64,000 nucleotides of DNA from Mantamonas sphyraenae STR306 (lineage: Eukaryota; Protista; CRuMs): NCBI GenBank assembly GCA_026936335.1, contig JAPMXV010000058.1:248001-312000 (forward strand). The letters run 5' to 3'. Of the stretch, positions 17,471-27,687 are shown piece by piece (the stretch's first letter is position 1; each line of letters begins with the position of its first letter). Under the pieces are notes generated by a model. It had not been told where the DNA came from, did not search any database, and saw only the letters and a list, made by a program, of their open reading frames with translations. A program made the position numbers and the translations under genes.

Positions 17471-20321
17471 ATGTCGACGGAGCTGCGCTTTTGCACGGAA
17501 GAGCAGGTGGCAGACTTGCAGGCCCTCCTACACGACGGCAACACACGCACAGCCCTGCGCTGGCTCAATTGTGTGTTCAAGGGCACTCAACCGCCATCCA
17601 GAGAGGCCGTGGTCAGTAACAGCGGCAGCAGCAACGGAGGCGAGGATGACGAAGCAGCAGCAGGGCAGCAAGGGGAGAGCAGCAGCAGCAGGGGAGGAGG
17701 CCAGGCTTGCGCAGGGCAAGGGCAAGGGCAAGGGCAAGGGCAAGGGCAAGGACAAGGTGGCACACGGACAGGAAAGGGCCGTGGAACTGACACACGTGTT
17801 GGAACGTGTGCTTGTGGAAGCCAAGCCAGACCCTCTGTCGGCAGGGTTGGAACTGCTGCGAGGCGCCCATCTGCTGCAGTCCATGTTTGGGAAAAAGTAC
17901 GGCATGGAGGTGTTGTGGACGGCCATGGAGCGAGTGTGTGGCCAATCATGTGAACCCATGCCAGTGCCTACGTTCTTGCGTGACACAAAGGCCGAGAGCG
18001 CCATGCAGGGGAGCACGGTGTCCCTGCTCAAGTTGCTTCCCGACGGCCGCGACTCGGTGGACGTCTGTGTGCCCATCTCTGCCGACGATCACATGGGCAC
18101 GGTGGAGCATGTGTTGCCTCTGCTGGACACATGGCTGTTCCGCCGTGCAGTGATGGTGTTTGGCCTGGAGTGGTGCCAAAGCCACGACAGCTGTGTCGCC
18201 CAGCTGAGCGAGTGGCTGGCCGACCCGCACCGCCACAAAGTGGCCCTCTCCATGGTCATGAGCCTTGGACTGCAGGCAGACGTGGACAACGAGGCCATCC
18301 TCAGCGAACTGCTGTACGACAAGAAGGTCAACGTGTGCGAGCGTTGGGTGCGAGGCAACAGGGACCTCAAACGCCTCCTGATCACCCTCATGGCACAACG
18401 CGACGAAAGTGCTGCCCAGGCACGCAAGCTGGTCAACAAGTGGCGCTTCTCACTCAACGATTGGCCGCAGCTGATCGCCCACCACAAGCGCAAGGCTCTG
18501 GCCTGGATGCGACACAAGTTTCCGGCACACACCGAGGTCATGATGGATTATGTGGAAGACAACATCCAACTTCAGCTCATGCTCCTCAGTCTCGAGGTGC
18601 AGGCGTGGCCAGCCAGTGGGCCACGTGCACACCAGCTGGATTTGGCCCTTGGTCTCGTGCGTCACTTTGGTCTAACCCCAGACAGCATTCGACAGGCCAC
18701 CATCGAACAGCTGGGCATGGATGTGAAGTATGCCATGCGTCTGGCTGACGAGGTGGAGGCTGCCGAGAGCGACGGCCGATTGCAGGAGGCCACCCTTCCG
18801 GCCGACGACCAGTGGAACGGCCGTCTGTTGCCCCAGGCCTACGAGGAGACACTCATCATGGTGGACAGTACGCAGGGCATGGCGGAATGTGTGGACCATT
18901 TGATGCATGCCGACCTTGTGGCTCTGGATGCAGAGTGGAAGCCGCCCACGTTCACCAACGATACGGCGCCCGTGGCCCTCTTGCAACTGGGCTCGCGCAC
19001 ACACGTCTTTCTGCTGGACATGCTTGCGCTGACTGCAGACGACATGGCATTGCTTGCGCCGGTGATGGCATCGCAGGACATTCGCAAGCTGGGGTTTGGG
19101 TTCACCAGCGACCAGCAGCAATTGCGCAAGTCGCCTGCACGCTCTGCCTTTGCCAATGTCAACAACATGCTGGAAATTCAGACGTTGTATGCCACGTACA
19201 CCATGTACGCGGACGCAGGGCAGCTGAAGAAGGGCGCTGCTGTGGAGGCGTTGGAGTCTGATCAGCTGCTGCTGGACGAGGCCAAGACTGACGCCGAGCT
19301 GCTGGCGGCCGTGTCGAGCCGGCAGCTGAAGCGCATCAAAGCCTCGCTGGCCACCGTGTGTGAGACGCTCCTGGGCGAGTCGCTGGACAAGGCGCAGCAG
19401 ATGTCGGATTGGGAGAGGCGGCCGCTGAGGCGGAAGCAGAAGGTGTACGCGTCCTTGGACGTGATCAGTCTCATTGACGTGTACGACGTGATGAAAGAGG
19501 CGTTGAATACGCAGCAGGTGGAGGTGTGGGACTTTTGTGCGGATAGCTGGTCCCTGACAGGGGCAAACACAATCCAGAAGAAGAAGCACGGCGCTGGGGG
19601 ACTCAACGACGAAGCACACGGCGGCGGAGGCAGCAGCAGCAGCAAGAAGAAGAAAGGCAAGGGTAAACGAGGGAGCAGCAGTGGAGACGACGGCGACAAC
19701 GGCGCAGGAAGCAGCAGTGGAGGTGGAGGTGGAGGTGGAGGTGGCACCCATTTGCCGTCGCATCTGTTTGAATTGGATGTGGCAAAGGACACGGAGCTGC
19801 GCTTTGCGGTGGATCACACGGTGAAGCGGCTGGCGAGGTCGTTGCGTGCGATTGGCTTCGACGCAGTTGTGCTGGAGCGCAAGGACATGGACAGTGCGCA
19901 CCAGGCAGCGGCAGATGGACGCGTGGTGTTGACCCGAGACAGCAAGTTTGCACAGAGCCAGTGGAGCAGCATGACGCTGTTGCTGCTGCGGGGCAACGCT
20001 GTGAGTGAGCAAGTGAACGAGGTGCTTGCAGCGACAGGAGTGACGATCGGCCAGGACGATGTGTTTCAGCGCTGTGTGCTGTGCAACAACGACAAACTGC
20101 AGTGGATGGATAGGGACGGGGTGAAGGAGCTCATCCCGGACAATGTCTACCAGGACGAGGAGATCGAGTCCTTTCAATTCTGCTCCGAATGCAACAAGGC
20201 ATTCTGGCGCGGTGAACACTACGACACCACCATCGAGTCGTACGTGACGGTGACCAGTGTCGAGGAGGCAGAGGAGGGAGGAGAGGGAGGAGAGGGAGGA
20301 GAGGGGAGTTTGTCTCAATGA
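17471..20321 (+). CDS. EXD3: EXD3/Mut-7-like 3'-5' exoribonuclease with C-terminal Mut7-C (PIN-like + Zn ribbon) domain
   Basis: DEDDy motifs VALDAEWKP, VALLQLG, KLGF, LDKAQQMSDWERRPL..QKVYASLD. Mut7-C motifs RFAVDHTVKRLARSLRAIGFDA, VLTRD, RCVLCN..CSECNKAFWRGEHY. Start is either 17471 (needs a frame break) or the in-frame ATG at 17646. Confidence 0.88.
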
Positions 20322-20349
20322 CATGCTTGCTGTTGCATGAATGAAATCC

Positions 20350-21057
20350 TCACCAGTCCACACCGTTCTTCACAATCCCCTTTTTGGTCCACTGGTCAGT
20401 GATCCCCTGTACAAAGTCTGCACGCACCACCTTGGCGCGTGCGATGGTGAGGCCGTCGCGCTCGACACGCAGGTAGACACCCTCCATTGGGCCATCGTAA
20501 AAGGCACTCTTTTCGGTTTCCAGCAGCTGCTCAAAGTCGTCTTTGCCTGAAAAGGAGCGTTTGCAGACGCGGCGGACACTGTGAATGCCCGTGTCGGCGA
20601 GGAGCTCGTCGCGCTTGTCGCTGCTGAGCCACTCGCCACTCTGCTTGTCGAGGATGTCAAAGGCGAGAAAGGTGCTGGGCAGCGAGGTGTATGGCACACT
20701 GTGTTGTGCATAGAGCCACTCGCCAAACAGGATACGCTCCTGGCCGAGGATATCGGCGAGGGCAACGCCGGTGTTTTCCAAGAACGTGTCCAGGGTGGCA
20801 AACTGGGCATGCGTCTCTTTGCTGACGTAGTGGGAACGGTTCTGCACACGCAGATTCCACTCGTCGTCGTAGGAAATGCCAATGTTTGCACCGTCGACCT
20901 TTTCCTCGACCACGAGCTCGACCGGTTCGAGGAAATCCTCGGGCGAATCGATGAGCAGGTCGTCCCGGGTGACGGCAGAGCCACCCAGGTCATACAAATG
21001 GGCTGTGGATGGAAACTTGAGGATGTCGATTTTGTGCTGGTGCTCTTCCTGGCTCAT
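20350..21057 (-). CDS. ATP-dependent RNA ligase (Rnl2-like nucleotidyltransferase), intronless
   Basis: Motif I EEKVDGANIG, then KFPSTAHL, motif III LFGEW, IIIa FLAFDI, IV EGVYLR, V RAKVV. Confidence 0.85.
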   Translation of the reverse strand: MSQEEHQHKIDILKFPSTAHLYDLGGSAVTRDDLLIDSPEDFLEPVELVVEEKVDGANIGISYDDEWNLRVQNRSHYVSKETHAQFATLDTFLENTGVALADILGQERILFGEWLYAQHSVPYTSLPSTFLAFDILDKQSGEWLSSDKRDELLADTGIHSVRRVCKRSFSGKDDFEQLLETEKSAFYDGPMEGVYLRVERDGLTIARAKVVRADFVQGITDQWTKKGIVKNGVDW

Positions 21058-21447
21058 CGCGGTGACGTTGTCTGCTGTCTGTCTGTTGAGCTGCCCTCGT
21101 GGGCGCGTGAGACTCACACGGAATCGTGGGTGTGCACCGTGACGATCACATGGTGGACTCACATCGGTGGGAGTCGGCGGTGTGGTCCGAGCTTGTTGTG
21201 GATGACGCACGGCGGGCGCCGGGCCTGCCACCCGAATCCGTCGTCTTTTTGTGAGTTGCCTGGGTGCGTGTGCGTGTGTGAGCGCGTGTCTAGCGTTGGA
21301 GCCATGTGTGTATAGGGTCGTGCACACGTGCATCGTCGGGGCCGCTGGAGCTGCGGGTGCCCTGCGGCTCGTGTGCGGGATGGCCGAAGCCGAGGGGGGG
21401 GGGACACACATTTGGGGCTTTTTGCGTCAAATCATGGCCAAGCAGCC

Positions 21448-21789
21448 GGCCCAGTTCCACGCGTATTGCGCGCGTTTGCGCATCTGCATGTGCCGTGAAA
21501 GCGGTGTGCACATGGCCATGCGCAGCAGGCGTGCTGTGGAGCTGGGTTTGCACCGGCTGGACTGTGTTCCGAGAGTGTTTGTGCAGGAAAAGCCGACGAA
21601 AGTCGCTGGATCACAAACACCGTGCCCCTTTGGACACTTGACTGCCGGTGCGCTGCCCACGGCGAGGGAGGTGCATGGCGGCCAGGTGCCGGCGACCCAG
21701 ATGTACCACATGTGCAGTGGCACATCTGGGTCGGTGGGGCCAGATGTGTGGGGTGCGGAAAGGCCCCAGAGACGCGCGTGGGGTTGGCC
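21448..21789 (+). ncRNA. Candidate structured non-coding RNA (unassigned) between the RNA ligase and MVP
   Basis: Multiple nested complementary helices found by eye (9, 8, 7, 9 and 12 bp plus a closing stem), a GAAA tetraloop, and G-U pairs favouring the + strand. No match to a known family was recognised. Confidence 0.45.
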
Positions 21790-21922
21790 CCGGCGAGGTT
21801 TGGGACCCTCTCAGAATTCGATGAGGAAAAAGAGGCGAGAGGCACAGGGTGTGCACCGGCTGACACAAGACAACACACCGCGGCCACCGGACGTTGCACA
21901 TCGCCACAGACACAACTGCACG

Positions 21923-24522
21923 ATGAGCAAGATTCAGCTGCTGCCCGACCGTTTCATCCATGTGTTGAACCGCAACACCAACACGACGTTTGTGGTGAAA
22001 GGCCCCACCAACTTTGTGCCCTCGGAGCACCAGGAGGTTGTGTATGGCCCGGCTGATTGCGTGCGCCTGGCACCGGACTCGTTTGCACGCGTCAAGAACC
22101 CTGTGGTGCAGGGCCAGGATCTGGAGGACACCGAGACACAGGTGAAGCTGAGGCATGGCGAGACGGAGATCCGCTTTGCCGACCCCGAGTCGGAGCCTTT
22201 CCCGCTGTACCCGGGTGAGCTGCTGATGGAGGTGGAGAAGATCCCCGTGGTGGGCACGGGCCAGGCGGCACACATTGTGGTCACGGATGACTACGAGGAC
22301 GAGACCGAGGGCTCGCGCTACGCAGGCGAAGAGTACATGGTGTTTGGCCCCTGCTCATACAAGCCGCGCATCGAGGAGTACTTGTACCGCATTGTGAACC
22401 CGATTGTGATTGGACACAACATGGCGCTGCGTGTGCGTGCGCGCACCAACTGCGTCGACTGGAAGGGCAACCAGCGCGTGCAGGGCGAGCTGTGGCTGAT
22501 CAAGGAGGACGGCGACTACATCCCGCGCGCCATGGAGGAGGTGGTGGACTTTGTGCATGCCACCACGCTCACGGACAGCAAGGCCATCCACGTGGAGGCG
22601 CTGACAGGCTTCCACGACACCCTGTTTGAAATCGACCGACGCCCGGGAGAGCAGTGGCTTGTGACGAACGAGCACACCGCCACGTACCTGCCGGACGTCA
22701 CCGAGCGCATCATCAAGCACGTGGACATCACTGTGTTGACGTCCGAGCAGTGGTGCGTGATCATGGAGCCCTACGACGAGTCCAAGCGCGAAGTGCGCCT
22801 GGGCCAGCGCGAGCTGCGCAAGGGCCCTGCCGTTTCTTCCTGCACCCCAGCGAGAGTCTGGAGGGTGGCTCTGCCAGGGACGTGCGCCTGCTGGAGCCAG
22901 GAGAGGCTGCGCTTCTGGGGTCCAACGCCGCTGTCAGCGTGGAGGACCTGGCCGACATGGGCATCGAGACGGAAGAGCCGTACGAGGCCGGACGTGTGTG
23001 GATGGTGTATGGCCCACGCCGCTTTGTGCCGCCCGTGGACGTGGAAGTGATTGAGTACCGCAGCACCATCCCGCTTGGCGACAACGAGGGTGTGTACGTG
23101 CGTGACGTGCGCACGGGCGAGGTGCGTGCCGAAATGGGCAACTCGTACCTGTTGCAGAGCCACGAGGTGCTGTGGGAGAAGCCGCTGACGCCACGCGTGG
23201 AGGAGCTGCTGCGCAACGGAGGCGCTGTGGGCGACCAGGACATCCGCAAGGTGTCGTACTTCAAGAGCTACATCGACGGCAACAACGAGGGCGAGCGCGA
23301 CAAGACGCGCGTGGTGGTGTACAAGTGCCCGCACAACTGCGCCGTGCAGCTGTACGACTACCAGGAGCGCACGGCTCGCGTTGTGTTTGGCCCCGACCTT
23401 GTCACGCTCGGCCCGCACGAGGAGTTTACCGTGCTGTCGCTGAGCGCAGGCGTGCCCAAGCGCTCTGGCGCTCTCAAGAGCCTGGCTCTGATGCTGGGCC
23501 CGGACTACATCAGCGACGTGTTTGACGTGGAAACCAGCGACCACGCACGTCTGCGCCTGCACCTGGCGTACAACAATTACTTCCGTGTGGACAAGGAGGA
23601 TCCGGAACAGGTGTCGCGCATCTTCAACATCCCAGACTTTATCGGCGACGCATGCAAGACGTGCTCGTCGCTGATTCGTGGCGCCATCGCCAAGGAATCG
23701 TTTGAGGACTTCCACAAGAACAGCGCCCACATCATTCGCGCCAGTCTGTTTGGCCTGACGGCGGAGAACAAGATTGGCGACGAGTTTGTGTTTGAACAGA
23801 ACAACCTGGTGATCACCAACGTGGATATCCGCGCCATCGACCCCGTGGACCGCAACATGCAGGAGTCGCTGCAGCGCTCTGTGCAGATGGCCATCGACAT
23901 TTCCACCAGCCTGCTGGAGGCCGAGTCGCACCACAAGGCGGCCGAAGTGAACCAGAAGAGCATGGGCGAGCTGGAGATGCAAAAGTACCGCAACGGCATC
24001 GAGGAGGAGCGCGAGCGCACGCAGCTGAAGAAGATTGTGGCCGCAAACAACGAGGTGGAAAAGGTGGGCCGTGCGCGCACCGAGACAGAGGCGGCAACGA
24101 TTGCAGTGACGCTGGACCTGGAGGGTGCAGTGACGCTTGCGGCGCTGCGTGCAGAGGCCAAGAAGAAGGTGTTTGACGCGGAGCTGTCCATCCTGAAGGC
24201 CAAGAGCAAGCAGGAGGAGTCGTTCCAGAAGAACAGCATGGAGCTGGAGGTGCAGCGGGAACGCGAGCTGGCCAATGTGGAGGTGACCAAGTTGGAGTCG
24301 ATGTGCTCGATCATCGGCAAGGAGACGGTGCTGGACATTGCGCGTGCCAACGCAGAGACCAAGACAAAGCTGGTGGACGGTCTGGGCCTGCGCGACTTTT
24401 TGATGGCCGATGGCAAGATGCCCGTGAACCTGTTTGGCACGATCGAGGCGTTGCTGGGGGAGGCAGCGTCCGAAGGCAAGGCTCCGGCCATCGAATACGA
24501 GTACGAGTATGAGTATGAGTGA
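21923..24522 (+). CDS. MVP: Major vault protein; intronless; 1-nt frame break near 22825
   Basis: MVP repeats (IHVLNRNTNTTFVVKGP, EPFPLYPGE, GEQWLVT, IPLGDNEGVYVRDVRTG), shoulder (VVFGPDLVTLGPHEEFTVLSLSAG.PK, VETSDHARLRL, PDFIGDACK) and cap helix (SLQRSVQMAIDIST, LMADGKMPVNLF). Confidence 0.95.
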
Positions 24523-26187: not shown

Positions 26188-26821
26188 TTATGGAGATGAC
26201 GATGATGACGATGATGATGATGATGATGAGCTGGAGCTCACTGCACTGCGTTTGGCGTCGTTGCTGGTGCCTGCAGAACTGCTGTCCGAACGCTTGCGCT
26301 TTGCAGCCTTCTTCTTCGTGCTGGACCGTTCGGCCTGGACACCGTCGACAATCTGGTCGAGCAGAGTAATCTGGAGGAGGAGGAGAGTGGAGAGCAATGA
26401 GCGGCAGAGGAAGTTGTGTGGGTGCGTGTGGGCGGTGTTTTTTCACGGGCTGTCAGGTGGACGGCCGATCAACGCAGGCACTTCGGCGCGCAGGGCCACT
26501 TACAATGGACTCGTTGTTGCGGAAACACATGCGCAAGTCGTCGGAAGTGACGGTTTTGCGCTTGGCGTGCTGTGCAAAGAGGGCGAGGTCGCGCGTCATG
26601 TTGCACAGGGTGGAAAAGGCAAAGTCGACCAACGCCATCTGGGTTTGGTCGGTCCACAACAAGGAGTGCTGTTTGCTGTGTGCTTCACACATGGTTTTGA
26701 CGGTGGCAAACAGGTCTGCCTTCCACACCATCTCCTCTCGCTGCTGTTCGTTCAGCTCCAGCGCCTCCACCGTGGCCTCGACGGCGTCGTCAAACTGCGC
26801 TCCCGCGTCCAGCTGACTCAT
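26188..26821 (-). CDS. CENPS: Centromere protein S / MHF1 (histone fold), one intron
   Basis: RDLALFAQHAKRKTVTSDDLRMCFRNN matches the CENP-S motif DL..FA.HAKR.T...D. Basic C-terminal tail. Confidence 0.82.
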
Positions 26822-26860
26822 CGCTTTGGTGTTGCTGGCGCCCCCATCCATCCACAAGCC

Positions 26861-27687
26861 ATGGACATCACCAGCGACTACTACGACATCGACCAAATCC
26901 TCGCTGAGGAAGAGGTAAGCACAGACGTGGGCACCCTTGTCACCATGTCCATGCATGGGGCGGACTTTGGGAGAGCCTCTGCTGACACCTCGTCTCCTCT
27001 GCGCCCTTTCCGGCCACCCCGACCACTCATCCATCCGCAGGCGGTGCCCGTAGAGTTCCAACAACAAGTGTACAGCGTGGGCTATCTCACAGAAAACGCA
27101 GAGCCGTTCAGCGACGTGAGTTTTTACGGAGCGCGGGGATTTGGCGCGCAAAACCTGCGGCGGCGCTGACACGGAAGAGACCACGACACGCGAGCACACA
27201 GATCCAACAGGGAACGCGCACAGACCTTCCGTTGTGGTTGGCATCCATTCTGGCCACGCGTGAATGCGTGTACATCCGTTTGCCCGGTTATTTCAAAGCA
27301 TCCTTCCGCTCGCTGCTGCGTGCCGAAGCCGACCAGGTGAACCTGTTTGCACGCTGTGAATACTTTTATTATGTGGGCGTACAGCTGGCTCGTCTGACGC
27401 CCGACAACGCAGAGATTGTGGAGGCCATGACGTCAGCCTTTGCCAATCGCAGGCACATGGTGCTGACCATGGCCCAAAACGCACGCAAGGATGACCTCAA
27501 CGAACTCACACGCACCATGACTGCCTACGAGCGTCGCCTCTTTATGAATGCCTACCGTGCCTCTGTAGCCTTTGCCAAATGGCGTGCGAACAAGCGCGTG
27601 CGCCTCGCTCGCCTGGGCAGTCCCAAGCGCTCGGGCAAGCGCTCGTTTGCCGCCATGAACACAAGCAGCAGCAGCAGTTCGCGATGA
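26861..27687 (+). CDS. GINS3: DNA replication GINS complex subunit Psf3, two introns
   Basis: YYDIDQILAEEE, VPVEF, GYL, DLPLWLA, LRAEA..VNL...CEYFYYVG, ERRLF match Psf3. Confidence 0.85.

What the first reader, a model, noticed from the sequence alone, without database searches (positions are those of the whole stretch)
21448..21789. ~340-nt multi-helix structured element just upstream of MVP: possible novel vault RNA or cis-regulatory RNA
Seen, nested complementarity on the + strand: closing stem 21448-21464/21774-21789 (~16 bp with G-U and one bulge); GCCATGCGC 21515-23/GTGCATGGC 21671-79; GCTGTGG 21533-39/CCACGGC 21657-63; GCACCGGC 21550-57/GCCGGTGC 21644-51; GTGTTTGTG 21575-83/CACAAACAC 21612-20 capped by CGAC-GAAA-GTCG (GNRA loop, 21594-605); a separate perfect 12-bp stem CGACCCAGATGT 21693-704/ACATCTGGGTCG 21722-33; and TGGGGCC 21735-41/GGCCCCA 21762-68. 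This divergent spacer is 865 nt, whereas most other head-to-head spacers here are 39-123 nt, so it probably carries an extra element. A box-A-like TGGCCAAGCAG lies at 21435-45, but the box-B-like GGTTTGGGACC (~21797) is degenerate and there is no oligo-T terminator. Inference: an undescribed ncRNA (vault RNA analogue or ligase substrate) or a structured MVP 5' leader.
Basis: partly seen in the sequence, partly recalled or inferred. Interest (0 to 1): 0.8.

Follow-up and report, generated by a model that had tools for sequence, protein, structure and literature searches.

The report
Structured non-coding stretch upstream of MVP
A 342-base stretch just upstream of the major vault protein gene of a small flagellate (most likely Mantamonas sphyraenae) really does fold far better than chance, but it lacks the marks of a vault RNA gene and is more likely a folded part of the gene's own untranslated 5' region.

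Summary
The 342 nt fold at -175 kcal/mol (z -4.5). The three most stable 120-nt windows of the 64-kb window on the + strand lie inside it, and it contains the window's best hairpin. It is single-copy and non-coding by codon usage, and it sits in the longest non-coding gap of the window.

The vault-RNA reading is not supported. In this genome small-RNA genes (SRP, U1, U2, U6, RNase P, tRNA-Sec) carry an upstream TGGTCGCAAGTNGTC element and/or a T5-T11 terminator. The element has neither, is about three times too long, and has no Rfam match. Its box A-like and box B-like sites lie 362 nt apart.

My best reading (about 0.4) is a cis-acting folded part of the MVP pre-mRNA. It is either a long 5'UTR intron (GTGAGTTG at 21251, CTGAC at 21860, CCACAG at 21911), like the folded RPL12 and COX6B introns I verified, or a retained leader. 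The leader variant rests on an unexplained absence of in-frame stops and an in-frame ATG bias.

No usable RNA reads and no close relative's DNA were available, so function is unproven.

First readers noted other hairpin-rich long spacers and introns elsewhere in this genome. Better vault/Y-type RNA candidates lie on another contig.

The parts
21448..21789 (+). The structured element (342 nt)
   Evidence: MFE -175.2 kcal/mol, z -4.5. Top outlier of the window. Block-shuffle z -3.1. Single copy in the genome.
21448..21548 (+). Domain 1: long irregular hairpin, better on the + strand
   Evidence: -58.1 kcal/mol, z -4.2 on +. -42.4 kcal/mol, z -2.4 on -. Three G-U pairs in its outer 13-bp helix (read from the sequence).
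21549..21652 (+). Domain 2: rod closed by GCACCGGC/GCCGGTGC, with a 9-bp inner helix and a GAAA-capped tip
   Evidence: z -3.8 on +, -4.6 on -. Inverted repeat I17.
21653..21789 (+). Domain 3: three-way junction that holds the 17-bp hairpin and the GGGGCC/GGCCCC hairpin
   Evidence: z -3.5 on +, -4.4 on -. Covariance model R1 built from it finds only itself in the 25-Mb genome.
21693..21733 (.). 17-bp hairpin with a 7-nt loop, the best inverted repeat of the window
   Evidence: There is one A-C mismatch on the + strand, which becomes G-U on the - strand and makes the stem perfect there.
21058..21922 (.). 865-nt non-coding spacer between the divergent RNA ligase and MVP genes
   Evidence: No codon-usage signal in any frame. 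No Pfam hit for its ORFs. The left half, 21058-21447, is unstructured, z +0.2.
20353..21057 (-). RNA ligase gene (PF09414)
   Evidence: Pfam E 3.9e-30. The coding signal stops at about 21060. An exact 260-nt contig of a metatranscriptome lies on 20709-20967.
21923..24522 (+). Major vault protein gene, with an apparent 1-nt frameshift near 22828-22835
   Evidence: Pfam Vault repeats and shoulder domain. The start MSKIQL is shared with the closest relative P0001. The frame change is seen.
21251..21258 (+). Candidate 5' splice site GTGAGTTG (inferred)
   Evidence: The same eight letters as the donor of the verified COX6B intron. GTGAG is frequent in this spacer, so this is weak on its own.
21860..21911 (+). 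Candidate branch site CTGAC (21860-64) and acceptor CCACAG (21906-11), 11 nt before the MVP ATG (inferred)
   Evidence: CTGAC/CTGAA branch-like sites and CCACAG acceptors are seen in the PKA2, U6 and RPL12 introns.
21380..21922 (+). Stretch with no stop in the MVP frame and 8 of 10 ATGs in that frame
   Evidence: Against shuffles the joint P is 7.5e-5 (1.5e-4 for any + frame). Three-base periodicity is weak (P 0.067) and the minus strand shows a mirror bias.
21128..21139 (+). First of three direct copies of GGGTGTGCACCG (the others at 21544-55 and 21847-58; the last two extend to 16 nt)
   Evidence: It is not a genome-wide motif.

Best explanation
The element is a real, single-copy, fold-prone stretch that I take to belong to the 5' non-coding part of the MVP transcription unit on the + strand. 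I think it acts in cis on that transcript and is not a separate RNA gene.

There are two variants, and I favour the first slightly.

(a) 5'UTR intron. It lies inside a roughly 660-nt intron running from GTGAGTTG at 21251 to CCACAG at 21911, with a CTGAC branch site at 21860. The MVP promoter would then sit next to the ligase promoter, as in the other very short divergent gene pairs. The fold compacts an unusually long intron and brings its ends together, as 'zipper' stems do in long yeast introns.

(b) Retained leader. It stays in a long leader that ribosomes enter at an upstream in-frame ATG (21380 or 21434). They would read through it and add a basic N-terminal extension to MVP.

What is shown: the fold potential, the lack of small-RNA gene signals, the lack of coding signal, and the presence of the splice-like signals. 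What is inferred: transcription, the strand, and splicing or translation.
For: Fold is real and local:
- z -4.5, top outlier of 64 kb on the + strand, block-shuffle z -3.1.
- The left half of the spacer (z +0.2) and the upstream regions of two MVP paralogues (z -0.5, +0.7) are not structured.

+ strand slightly favoured:
- The top three 120-nt windows are on +.
- Domain 1 has z -4.2 on + against -2.4 on -.
- 13 G-U pairs on + against 4 on -.

Not an independent small-RNA gene: no upstream promoter element, no T-run, no Rfam hit, no paralogue.

Intron variant:
- The donor octamer is identical to that of the verified COX6B intron.
- CTGAC plus CCACAG match the branch-like sites and acceptors of the PKA2, U6 and RPL12 introns.
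- Two verified long introns (RPL12 485 nt, COX6B 483 nt) also fold better than shuffles (z -2.6, -3.2). The 21252-21911 stretch I folded (the donor G at 21251 was left off) gives z -3.4.
- Splicing would remove all the ATGs that lie between the donor (21251) and the acceptor (21911).
- It would shrink the true promoter spacer to under 200 nt, in line with the 39-nt spacer seen at 26821-26861.
- Introns at or beside the start codon are seen in this window.

Leader variant: no stop in the MVP frame over 224 codons (P 0.0065) and 8 of 10 ATGs in frame (joint P about 1e-4).
Against: - There is no transcript evidence. The only RNA run found holds one contig, inside the ligase gene.
- No relative's DNA was available for covariation. 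The closest MVP is 77% identical and known only as a protein; metagenome loci are 36-38% identical.
- The minus strand folds about as well, and the best hairpin is perfect only on the minus strand.
- GTGAG occurs five times in this spacer on the two strands, so the donor match is weak evidence.
- The branch site lies 47 nt from the acceptor, against 9-28 nt in the verified introns.
- End-to-end pairing of the candidate intron is driven by composition (z -1.0).
- The frame bias argues against variant (a). The weak periodicity and near-zero codon score argue against a true coding extension in (b). Five of the in-frame ATGs sit in CATG palindromes, so the same bias appears on the minus strand in the ligase frame.
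- The MVP paralogues have no such element.
Confidence: 0.42

Rival explanations
1. It is untranscribed DNA: a stretch of promoter-distal or neutral intergenic sequence rich in short inverted repeats. These could be protein-binding palindromes or products of template-switch mutation. It would have no RNA function.
For: - Both strands fold well and the strand signals are mixed.
- CATG, GTGCAC and TGCGCA palindromes and three direct copies of a 12-mer are packed into the spacer.
- Part of the z-score comes from local composition: z drops from -4.5 to -3.1 with block shuffles.
- First readers report many hairpin-rich long spacers and introns in this genome, and two verified introns show a milder form. 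This hints at a genome-wide tendency of non-coding DNA.
- The global fold is poorly defined: the MFE has negligible weight in the ensemble and the centroid differs from it.
Against: - In a genome with 39-nt divergent spacers, 700 nt of idle unique DNA is unexpected.
- The two arms are not colinear inverted copies (local score 18 against a null of 15.8), so it is not a decayed palindrome.
- No other copy exists, so it is not a repeat family.
- Other non-coding stretches of the window, and the left half of the same spacer, are not structured.
- The frame-specific lack of stops and the ATG bias are not expected of untranscribed DNA.
Confidence: 0.28
2. It is an independent RNA polymerase II non-coding RNA gene of a new family, on either strand, that happens to lie between the ligase and MVP genes.
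For: - Strong, domain-wise fold in the longest non-coding gap of a compact window.
- No coding potential.
- No match to any known RNA family.
Against: - No promoter or 3'-end signal of the kind seen at every small-RNA gene I could find in this genome.
- No paralogue.
- No expression or conservation data.
Confidence: 0.15
3. It belongs to the minus-strand ligase transcript (long leader or 5'UTR intron) or to an antisense transcript.
For: - The minus strand has z -6.6 overall, and domains 2 and 3 score slightly better there.
- The 17-bp hairpin is perfect only on the minus strand.
- The ligase frame is open up to 21411, and 7 of 10 upstream ATGs are in the ligase frame.
- A CTCAAC-(ACAG)n acceptor-like site lies just upstream of the ligase ATG.
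Against: - Absolute stability and the window-wide ranking favour the + strand.
- Domain 1 is clearly weaker on the minus strand.
- The element is 390 nt from the ligase ATG but only 134 nt from the MVP ATG.
- The GTGAGT donors on the minus strand lie within 110 nt of the ligase ATG and would give only a short intron that excludes the element (read).
Confidence: 0.08
4. It is a vault RNA, or another RNA polymerase III transcript bound by TEP1.
For: - It lies next to MVP.
- The genome encodes a TEP1-like TROVE protein, a vault PARP and several MVP paralogues, so a vault RNA is expected somewhere (first-reader notes).
- Box A-like and box B-like sites exist with 2 mismatches each.
Against: - 342 nt against 88-140 nt (PMC7904556).
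- The boxes are 362 nt apart.
- No run of T4 or longer downstream on +, whereas SRP, RNase P, U6, U1, U2 and tRNA-Sec here all end in T5-T11.
- No upstream promoter element.
- No Rfam Vault hit anywhere in the genome.
- A tandem cluster of four RNAs on contig 70, each with the promoter element and a T-run, looks more like Y or vault RNAs; three are close paralogues with a terminal stem and a covarying hairpin.
Confidence: 0.02

Closest known systems
Structured long spliceosomal introns with 'zipper' stems (Saccharomyces cerevisiae RPS17B, RPL7B and others; PMC12350175, PMC2536676, PMC12311795)
   Same: - Intron-poor, compact genome with 5'-biased introns.
- An unusually long intron candidate whose interior folds into stable domains and whose ends can pair.
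- Two verified long introns of the same genome (RPL12, COX6B) also fold better than shuffles.
   Different: - Splicing here is inferred from sequence signals only.
- The candidate would lie in the 5'UTR of a non-ribosomal gene.
- The fold is stronger (z -4.5) than in the verified introns.
- End-to-end pairing is driven by composition.
Long structured 5' leaders with upstream AUGs that gate translation or give N-terminally extended isoforms
   Same: - Upstream of a start codon, highly stable fold, many upstream ATGs.
- The frame is open into the main ORF.
   Different: - Such leaders are unusual in a genome with tens-of-nucleotide spacers.
- No transcript start is known.
- The relative's MVP starts at MSKIQL.
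- The codon score is near zero.
Vault RNA (Rfam RF00006; PMC7904556)
   Same: Genomic neighbourhood of vault genes, and a predicted stem joining the two ends.
   Different: - About three times too long.
- No usable box A / box B pair.
- No terminator.
- No model match.
- It lacks the small-RNA gene architecture of this genome.
Foldback or MITE-type inverted-repeat elements
   Same: Dense inverted repeats and a 16-nt imperfect terminal inverted repeat.
   Different: - Single copy.
- The arms are not colinear.
- No target-site duplication is visible.

Membership tests
Vault RNA | Length about 88-140 nt (PMC7904556) | tested here: not met
   The element is 342 nt. No sub-domain is bounded by promoter and terminator signals.
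Vault RNA | RNA polymerase III type 2 promoter: internal box A and box B at tRNA-like spacing | tested here: not met
A second pair (21727 and 21797) also has 2 mismatches each and is followed by no terminator. No tRNA-like gene was found.
Vault RNA | Oligo-T terminator at the 3' end | tested here: not met
   No run of T4 or longer on the + strand from 21424 to 23000. SRP, RNase P, U6, U1, U2 and tRNA-Sec genes of the same genome end in T5-T11.
Vault RNA | Match to the Rfam Vault model | tested here: not met
   No hit at E up to 10 in the region or in the whole genome.
Vault RNA | Association with TEP1 and vault particles | not testable with these tools
   One TEP1-like TROVE gene is present. 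Binding needs an experiment.
Small-RNA genes of this genome (promoter-element type) | TGGTCGCAAGTNGTC element about 55-75 nt upstream of the RNA | tested here: not met
   The motif is found upstream of SRP, U1, tRNA-Sec, the contig 70 cluster and others. No match with up to 2 mismatches in the 10-nt core lies anywhere in 19114-23532 of the window.
RNase P, RNase MRP and SRP RNA | Match to the family model; normally one gene per genome | tested here: not met
   All three are found elsewhere above the Rfam cut-off. There is no hit in the element.
Telomerase RNA | Template of at least 1.3 telomere repeats (CCCTAA permutations; telomeres here are TTAGGG) | tested here: not met
   Telomere repeats were read at ten contig ends. 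No 8-mer of the repeat occurs anywhere in the window, and no 7-mer in 20500-22500.
Spliceosomal intron (5'UTR of MVP) | GT donor, branch site and YAG acceptor like those of verified introns of the genome | tested here: inconclusive
   GTGAGTTG at 21251, CTGAC at 21860 and CCACAG at 21911 match verified introns. But GTGAG is common in this spacer, and the branch-to-acceptor distance of 47 nt is longer than in the verified cases.
Spliceosomal intron (5'UTR of MVP) | Spliced junction in RNA | not testable with these tools
   The only run found is a metatranscriptome held as contigs, with nothing over the spacer. Exact-protein look-ups were blank.
Protein-coding exon (N-terminal extension of MVP) | Codon usage and three-base periodicity like the genome's genes; homologues | tested here: not met
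   - Codon score is about 0 against 0.73 for MVP.
- Periodicity P is 0.067 against 0 of 2,000 shuffles reaching the value for real MVP coding sequence.
- No Pfam hit.
- The relative's protein starts at MSKIQL.
- Only the open frame and the ATG phase are unusual.
Foldback / MITE element | Multiple copies; colinear inverted arms | tested here: not met
   Only self-matches in 25 Mb by DNA search and by covariance model. The arm-to-arm alignment is at chance level.

The most novel reading that the evidence does not exclude
The stretch is a functional vault-linked RNA element of a new kind. One form: a structured RNA (free, or released from the MVP 5' intron) that serves the vault or the neighbouring RNA ligase and EXD3 genes. 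The other form: a structured leader that is read in frame and gives MVP a basic, Cys/His-rich N-terminal arm inside the particle. The open MVP frame, the ATG phase bias and the exceptional fold do not exclude this.
Probability: 0.07. Interest if true: 0.7.

Novelty: new member of a known kind. Interest (0 to 1): 0.3.

Why it matters
Mantamonas belongs to CRuMs, a deep branch of eukaryotes. Knowing what its vault RNA is would therefore inform the ancestral make-up of vaults. This work removes one tempting candidate and gives a practical rule for finding small-RNA genes in this genome (an upstream promoter element plus a T-run). It also points to better candidates. If the element is a structured 5'UTR intron or leader, it would be an example of RNA folding controlling expression of a vault gene in an intron-poor protist. 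That is of moderate interest and easy to test with the RNA-seq data that already exist for this species.

Tried and rejected
- Rfam, at gathering thresholds over the whole window and at E up to 10 over 20900-22100: only chance-level hits.
- tRNA scan: none.
- Bacterial promoter/terminator scan: not informative.
- RNase P, MRP and SRP: all found elsewhere.
- Telomerase RNA: no template.
- Repeat or transposon: no other copy by DNA search or by a covariance model of domain 3.
- Decayed long palindrome: the arms do not align.
- Hidden protein gene: no Pfam hit, no codon signal.
- A locus on contig 21 that shares an exact 16-mer: no further similarity, taken as chance.
- Comparative route: metagenome loci are only 36-38% identical at the protein level. 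The closest MVP (77%) exists only as a transcriptome-derived protein with no DNA. No covariation test was therefore possible.
- Expression route: one metatranscriptome with 5% of the words. Laying it on 4,301 bases gave one exact contig in the ligase gene and nothing on the spacer, which proves nothing.
- Exact-protein look-ups for the ligase and for two MVP models: blank, possibly withheld.
- Upstream regions of two MVP paralogues: unstructured, so there is no shared MVP leader element.
- End-to-end pairing of the candidate intron: strong in absolute terms but explained by composition.
- PDB and NCBIfam searches with the ligase added nothing beyond Pfam.

Full report
**Setting.** The window is G000 contig 58, bases 248,001-312,000, of a 25.06-Mb assembly in 78 contigs. 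All ten contig starts that I read carry the telomere repeat (CCCTAA strand, i.e. TTAGGG). Size, contig number, GC content (59%) and telomeres match the published FALCON assembly of Mantamonas sphyraenae (PMC10492846). I take that as the organism; this rests on matching statistics, not on a name given by a tool.

The element lies between two divergent genes:
- A PF09414 RNA ligase on the minus strand, with its ATG at 21057.
- The major vault protein (MVP) on the plus strand, with its ATG at 21923.

The MVP start is confirmed by the closest relative in the protein database. This is a transcriptome-derived protein, 77% identical over the C-terminal two thirds, that also begins MSKIQL.

The fold statistics are:
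- The 342 nt fold at -175.2 kcal/mol. Shuffles give -151.6 +/- 5.2, so z is -4.5 and none of 100 shuffles is as stable.
- In my own scans the element is the most stable of 64 sampled 342-nt windows and has the best z.
- It contains the three most stable of 1,597 GC-corrected 120-nt windows on the + strand.
- Its 17-bp hairpin (21693-21733) is the best local inverted repeat in 64 kb.
- A stricter null that shuffles dinucleotides only inside 40-nt blocks lowers z to -3.1, and still none of 40 shuffles reaches the real value. Part of the signal is therefore local composition, but not all of it.

The minimum-energy fold is three adjacent domains (21448-21548, 21549-21652, 21653-21789). Each is significant on its own (z -4.2, -3.8, -3.5).

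The structure is local. The left half of the spacer (21058-21447) has z +0.2.

The strand is not settled:
- The minus strand has z -6.6 overall.
- The 17-bp hairpin is perfect only on the minus strand.
- Domain 1, the absolute energies, the window-wide ranking and the G-U count (13 against 4) favour the plus strand.

**What it is not.**
- It is not protein-coding. No frame reaches the codon score of real genes and no ORF hits Pfam.
- It is not a repeat. A DNA search and a covariance model of domain 3 find only the element itself in the genome.
- It is not a decayed long palindrome. The two halves do not align as inverted copies.
- It is none of the large housekeeping RNAs. RNase MRP, RNase P and SRP RNA are found elsewhere above the Rfam cut-offs. 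The spacer has no telomere template. No Rfam family matches.

**Why it is not a vault RNA gene.** The housekeeping RNA genes showed me what small-RNA genes look like in this genome.
- SRP RNA and U1 share an upstream element, TGGTCGCAAGT(G/C)GTC, about 60-75 nt before the RNA.
- Genome-wide this 15-mer has six exact and five one-mismatch copies.
- One copy precedes a selenocysteine tRNA, a classic upstream-promoter polymerase III gene.
- Others precede RNase P RNA, U6 (this copy has two mismatches), and several RNAs without any Rfam match.
- SRP, RNase P, U6, U1, U2 and tRNA-Sec are all followed by runs of T5-T11.

The element has no such upstream motif; the 10-nt core has no match with up to two mismatches between 19114 and 23532. 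No run of four or more T follows on the + strand for 1.2 kb.

Its box A-like and box B-like sites have two mismatches each and lie 362 nt apart. That is far beyond what a type 2 promoter allows. Vault RNAs are 88-140 nt polymerase III type 2 transcripts (PMC7904556). Rfam Vault finds nothing in the genome.

The genome does encode one TEP1-like TROVE protein in a 2,990-residue frame and at least three further MVP-like loci. A vault RNA is therefore expected, but not here.

A better candidate class lies on contig 70 (278,527-279,620). It is a tandem set of four units, each with the promoter element and a T-run. Three are close paralogues of about 140 nt with a terminal stem and a central hairpin that keeps pairing through changes on both sides. 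I did not take this further.

**What it most likely is.** Two facts need explaining together. One is a 700-nt surplus of unique non-coding DNA in a genome where a divergent pair can share 39 nt. The other is the strong fold. The stretch also holds ten ATGs on the + strand between 21380 and the MVP start, so it cannot be an ordinary scanned leader.

*Variant (a): a 5'UTR intron.*
- GTGAGTTG at 21251 is identical to the donor of the COX6B intron.
- CTGAC at 21860 and CCACAG at 21911 resemble the branch-like sites and acceptors of the PKA2, U6 and RPL12 introns.
- The acceptor would sit 11 nt before the ATG, in a genome where introns at or beside the start codon are seen.
- I located and folded two long introns flagged by first readers. 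RPL12 (485 nt) has z -2.6 and COX6B (483 nt) has z -3.2. Long introns here do tend to be folded, as in yeast, where zipper stems bring the splice sites of long introns together (PMC12350175, PMC2536676).
- Weaknesses: GTGAG is frequent in this spacer. The branch site is 47 nt from the acceptor. The end-to-end pairing is explained by composition.

*Variant (b): a retained leader read in frame.*
- The MVP frame has no stop for 224 codons upstream (P 0.0065).
- Eight of ten ATGs lie in that frame.
- The joint probability under dinucleotide shuffles is 7.5e-5, or 1.5e-4 for any + frame.
- This is what selection on a ribosome-read leader would produce, and it is not expected of an intron.
- Against it: three-base periodicity is weak (P 0.067) and the codon score is near zero. 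The relative's protein has no extension. Five of the ATGs lie in CATG palindromes, so the mirror bias appears on the minus strand in the ligase frame.
- I noticed this pattern after looking at the data, so I treat it as suggestive and unexplained.

I give the union of (a) and (b) about 0.42.

**Rivals.**
- Untranscribed, palindrome-rich DNA: 0.28. Both strands fold, the strand signals are mixed, there are many short palindromes and a local 12-mer repeated three times, and there may be a genome-wide tendency of non-coding DNA to be hairpin-rich.
- An independent polymerase II non-coding RNA: 0.15.
- A ligase-side or antisense transcript: 0.08.
- A vault or other polymerase III RNA: 0.02.

**Limits.**
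- No RNA evidence could be obtained. The single run offered is an environmental metatranscriptome kept as contigs. It gave one exact 260-nt contig in the ligase gene and nothing on the spacer.
- No close relative's DNA is reachable, so covariation could not be tested.
- The ligase-substrate idea could not be tested.

**Verdict.** The vault-RNA interpretation fails the tests that could be run. The most economical reading is a cis-acting folded part of the MVP 5' untranslated region, as an intron or a retained leader. Existing RNA-seq data could decide between these readings.

Noticed in passing
window 22820-22840: The MVP reading frame shifts by one base inside ...GGCCCTGCCGTTTCTTCC... with no room for an intron. 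The relative reads ...ELREGPCTFFLHP... straight through. This is either a residual homopolymer error of the PacBio assembly or a real frameshift.
   Followed up: partly
G000 contigs 25, 60, 23, 45, 69, 70, 6, 20, 54 (loci L007, L031, L032, L005, L028, L034-L036, L033): A promoter-like element TGGTCGCAAGT(G/C/T)GTC lies upstream of SRP RNA, U1, tRNA-Sec, RNase P, U6 (a two-mismatch copy) and several unknown RNAs. It has six exact and five one-mismatch copies in 25 Mb. Together with a T5-T11 run downstream it defines small-RNA genes in this genome.
   Followed up: partly
L034 (G000:C70:278400-280000), units at 128-348, 394-634, 697-931, 993-1226: This is a tandem cluster of four RNA genes, each with the promoter element and a T-run, and none with an Rfam match. 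Three are paralogues of about 140 nt with a 5'/3' terminal stem and a central hairpin that keeps pairing through double changes. They are candidate Y or vault-type RNAs for the single TEP1-like TROVE protein.
   Followed up: partly
L028 (G000:C69:261789-264845) and L027, minus strand: Both U6 snRNA genes appear to be interrupted by an mRNA-type intron (GTTCGTAG...CCCACAG, roughly 130 nt) between ...ACAGAGAAGATTAG and CATGGTCCCTGCACAAGGATGACAC. This would explain why Rfam aligns only 57 nt.
   Followed up: no
L035 (G000:C6:313000-313800) and L036 (G000:C20:74800-75600), minus strand: Two more RNA genes carry the promoter element and a T-run but have no Rfam match. One looks U5-like (a CCUUUUCC loop and an AAUUUCUGG Sm-like site). 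The other has TATAAA about 25 nt after the element.
   Followed up: no
window 21380-21922: There is no stop in the MVP frame and 8 of 10 ATGs lie in that frame (joint P about 1e-4 against shuffles). Yet periodicity is weak and the codon score is near zero. The minus strand shows the mirror bias in the ligase frame because five of the ATGs sit in CATG palindromes.
   Followed up: partly
window 21128-21139, 21544-21559, 21847-21862: Three direct copies of GGGTGTGCACCG lie in the spacer, and two of them extend to 16 nt. The copies sit 71-82 nt from the ligase ATG, at the start of domain 2, and 61-76 nt from the MVP ATG. The motif is not enriched genome-wide.
   Followed up: partly
L024 (G000:C6:115097-118807), L026 (G000:C6:208405-211785), G000:C22:107648-108259: There are further MVP-like genes. 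The two on contig 6 share near-identical 5' ends and a first intron, which suggests recent duplication. Their upstream regions are not structured.
   Followed up: partly
window 20709-20967: A 260-nt contig of an 'outdoor' metatranscriptome from 2023 matches the ligase coding sequence exactly. This organism, or a very close strain, is therefore present and expressing the ligase in an environmental sample.
   Followed up: no
L041:834-1318 and L038:1642-2124: The RPL12 (485 nt) and COX6B (483 nt) introns fold better than shuffles (z -2.6 and -3.2; block-shuffle z -1.9 and -2.3). The COX6B intron pairs a GU-rich 5' end with a CA-rich 3' end.
   Followed up: yes
window 21058-21411, minus strand: The ligase frame stays open for 118 codons upstream of its ATG, back to an ATG at 21411. 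The translation is Pro/Ala/Arg/Thr/His-rich and has no codon signal, so it is probably not coding.
   Followed up: partly
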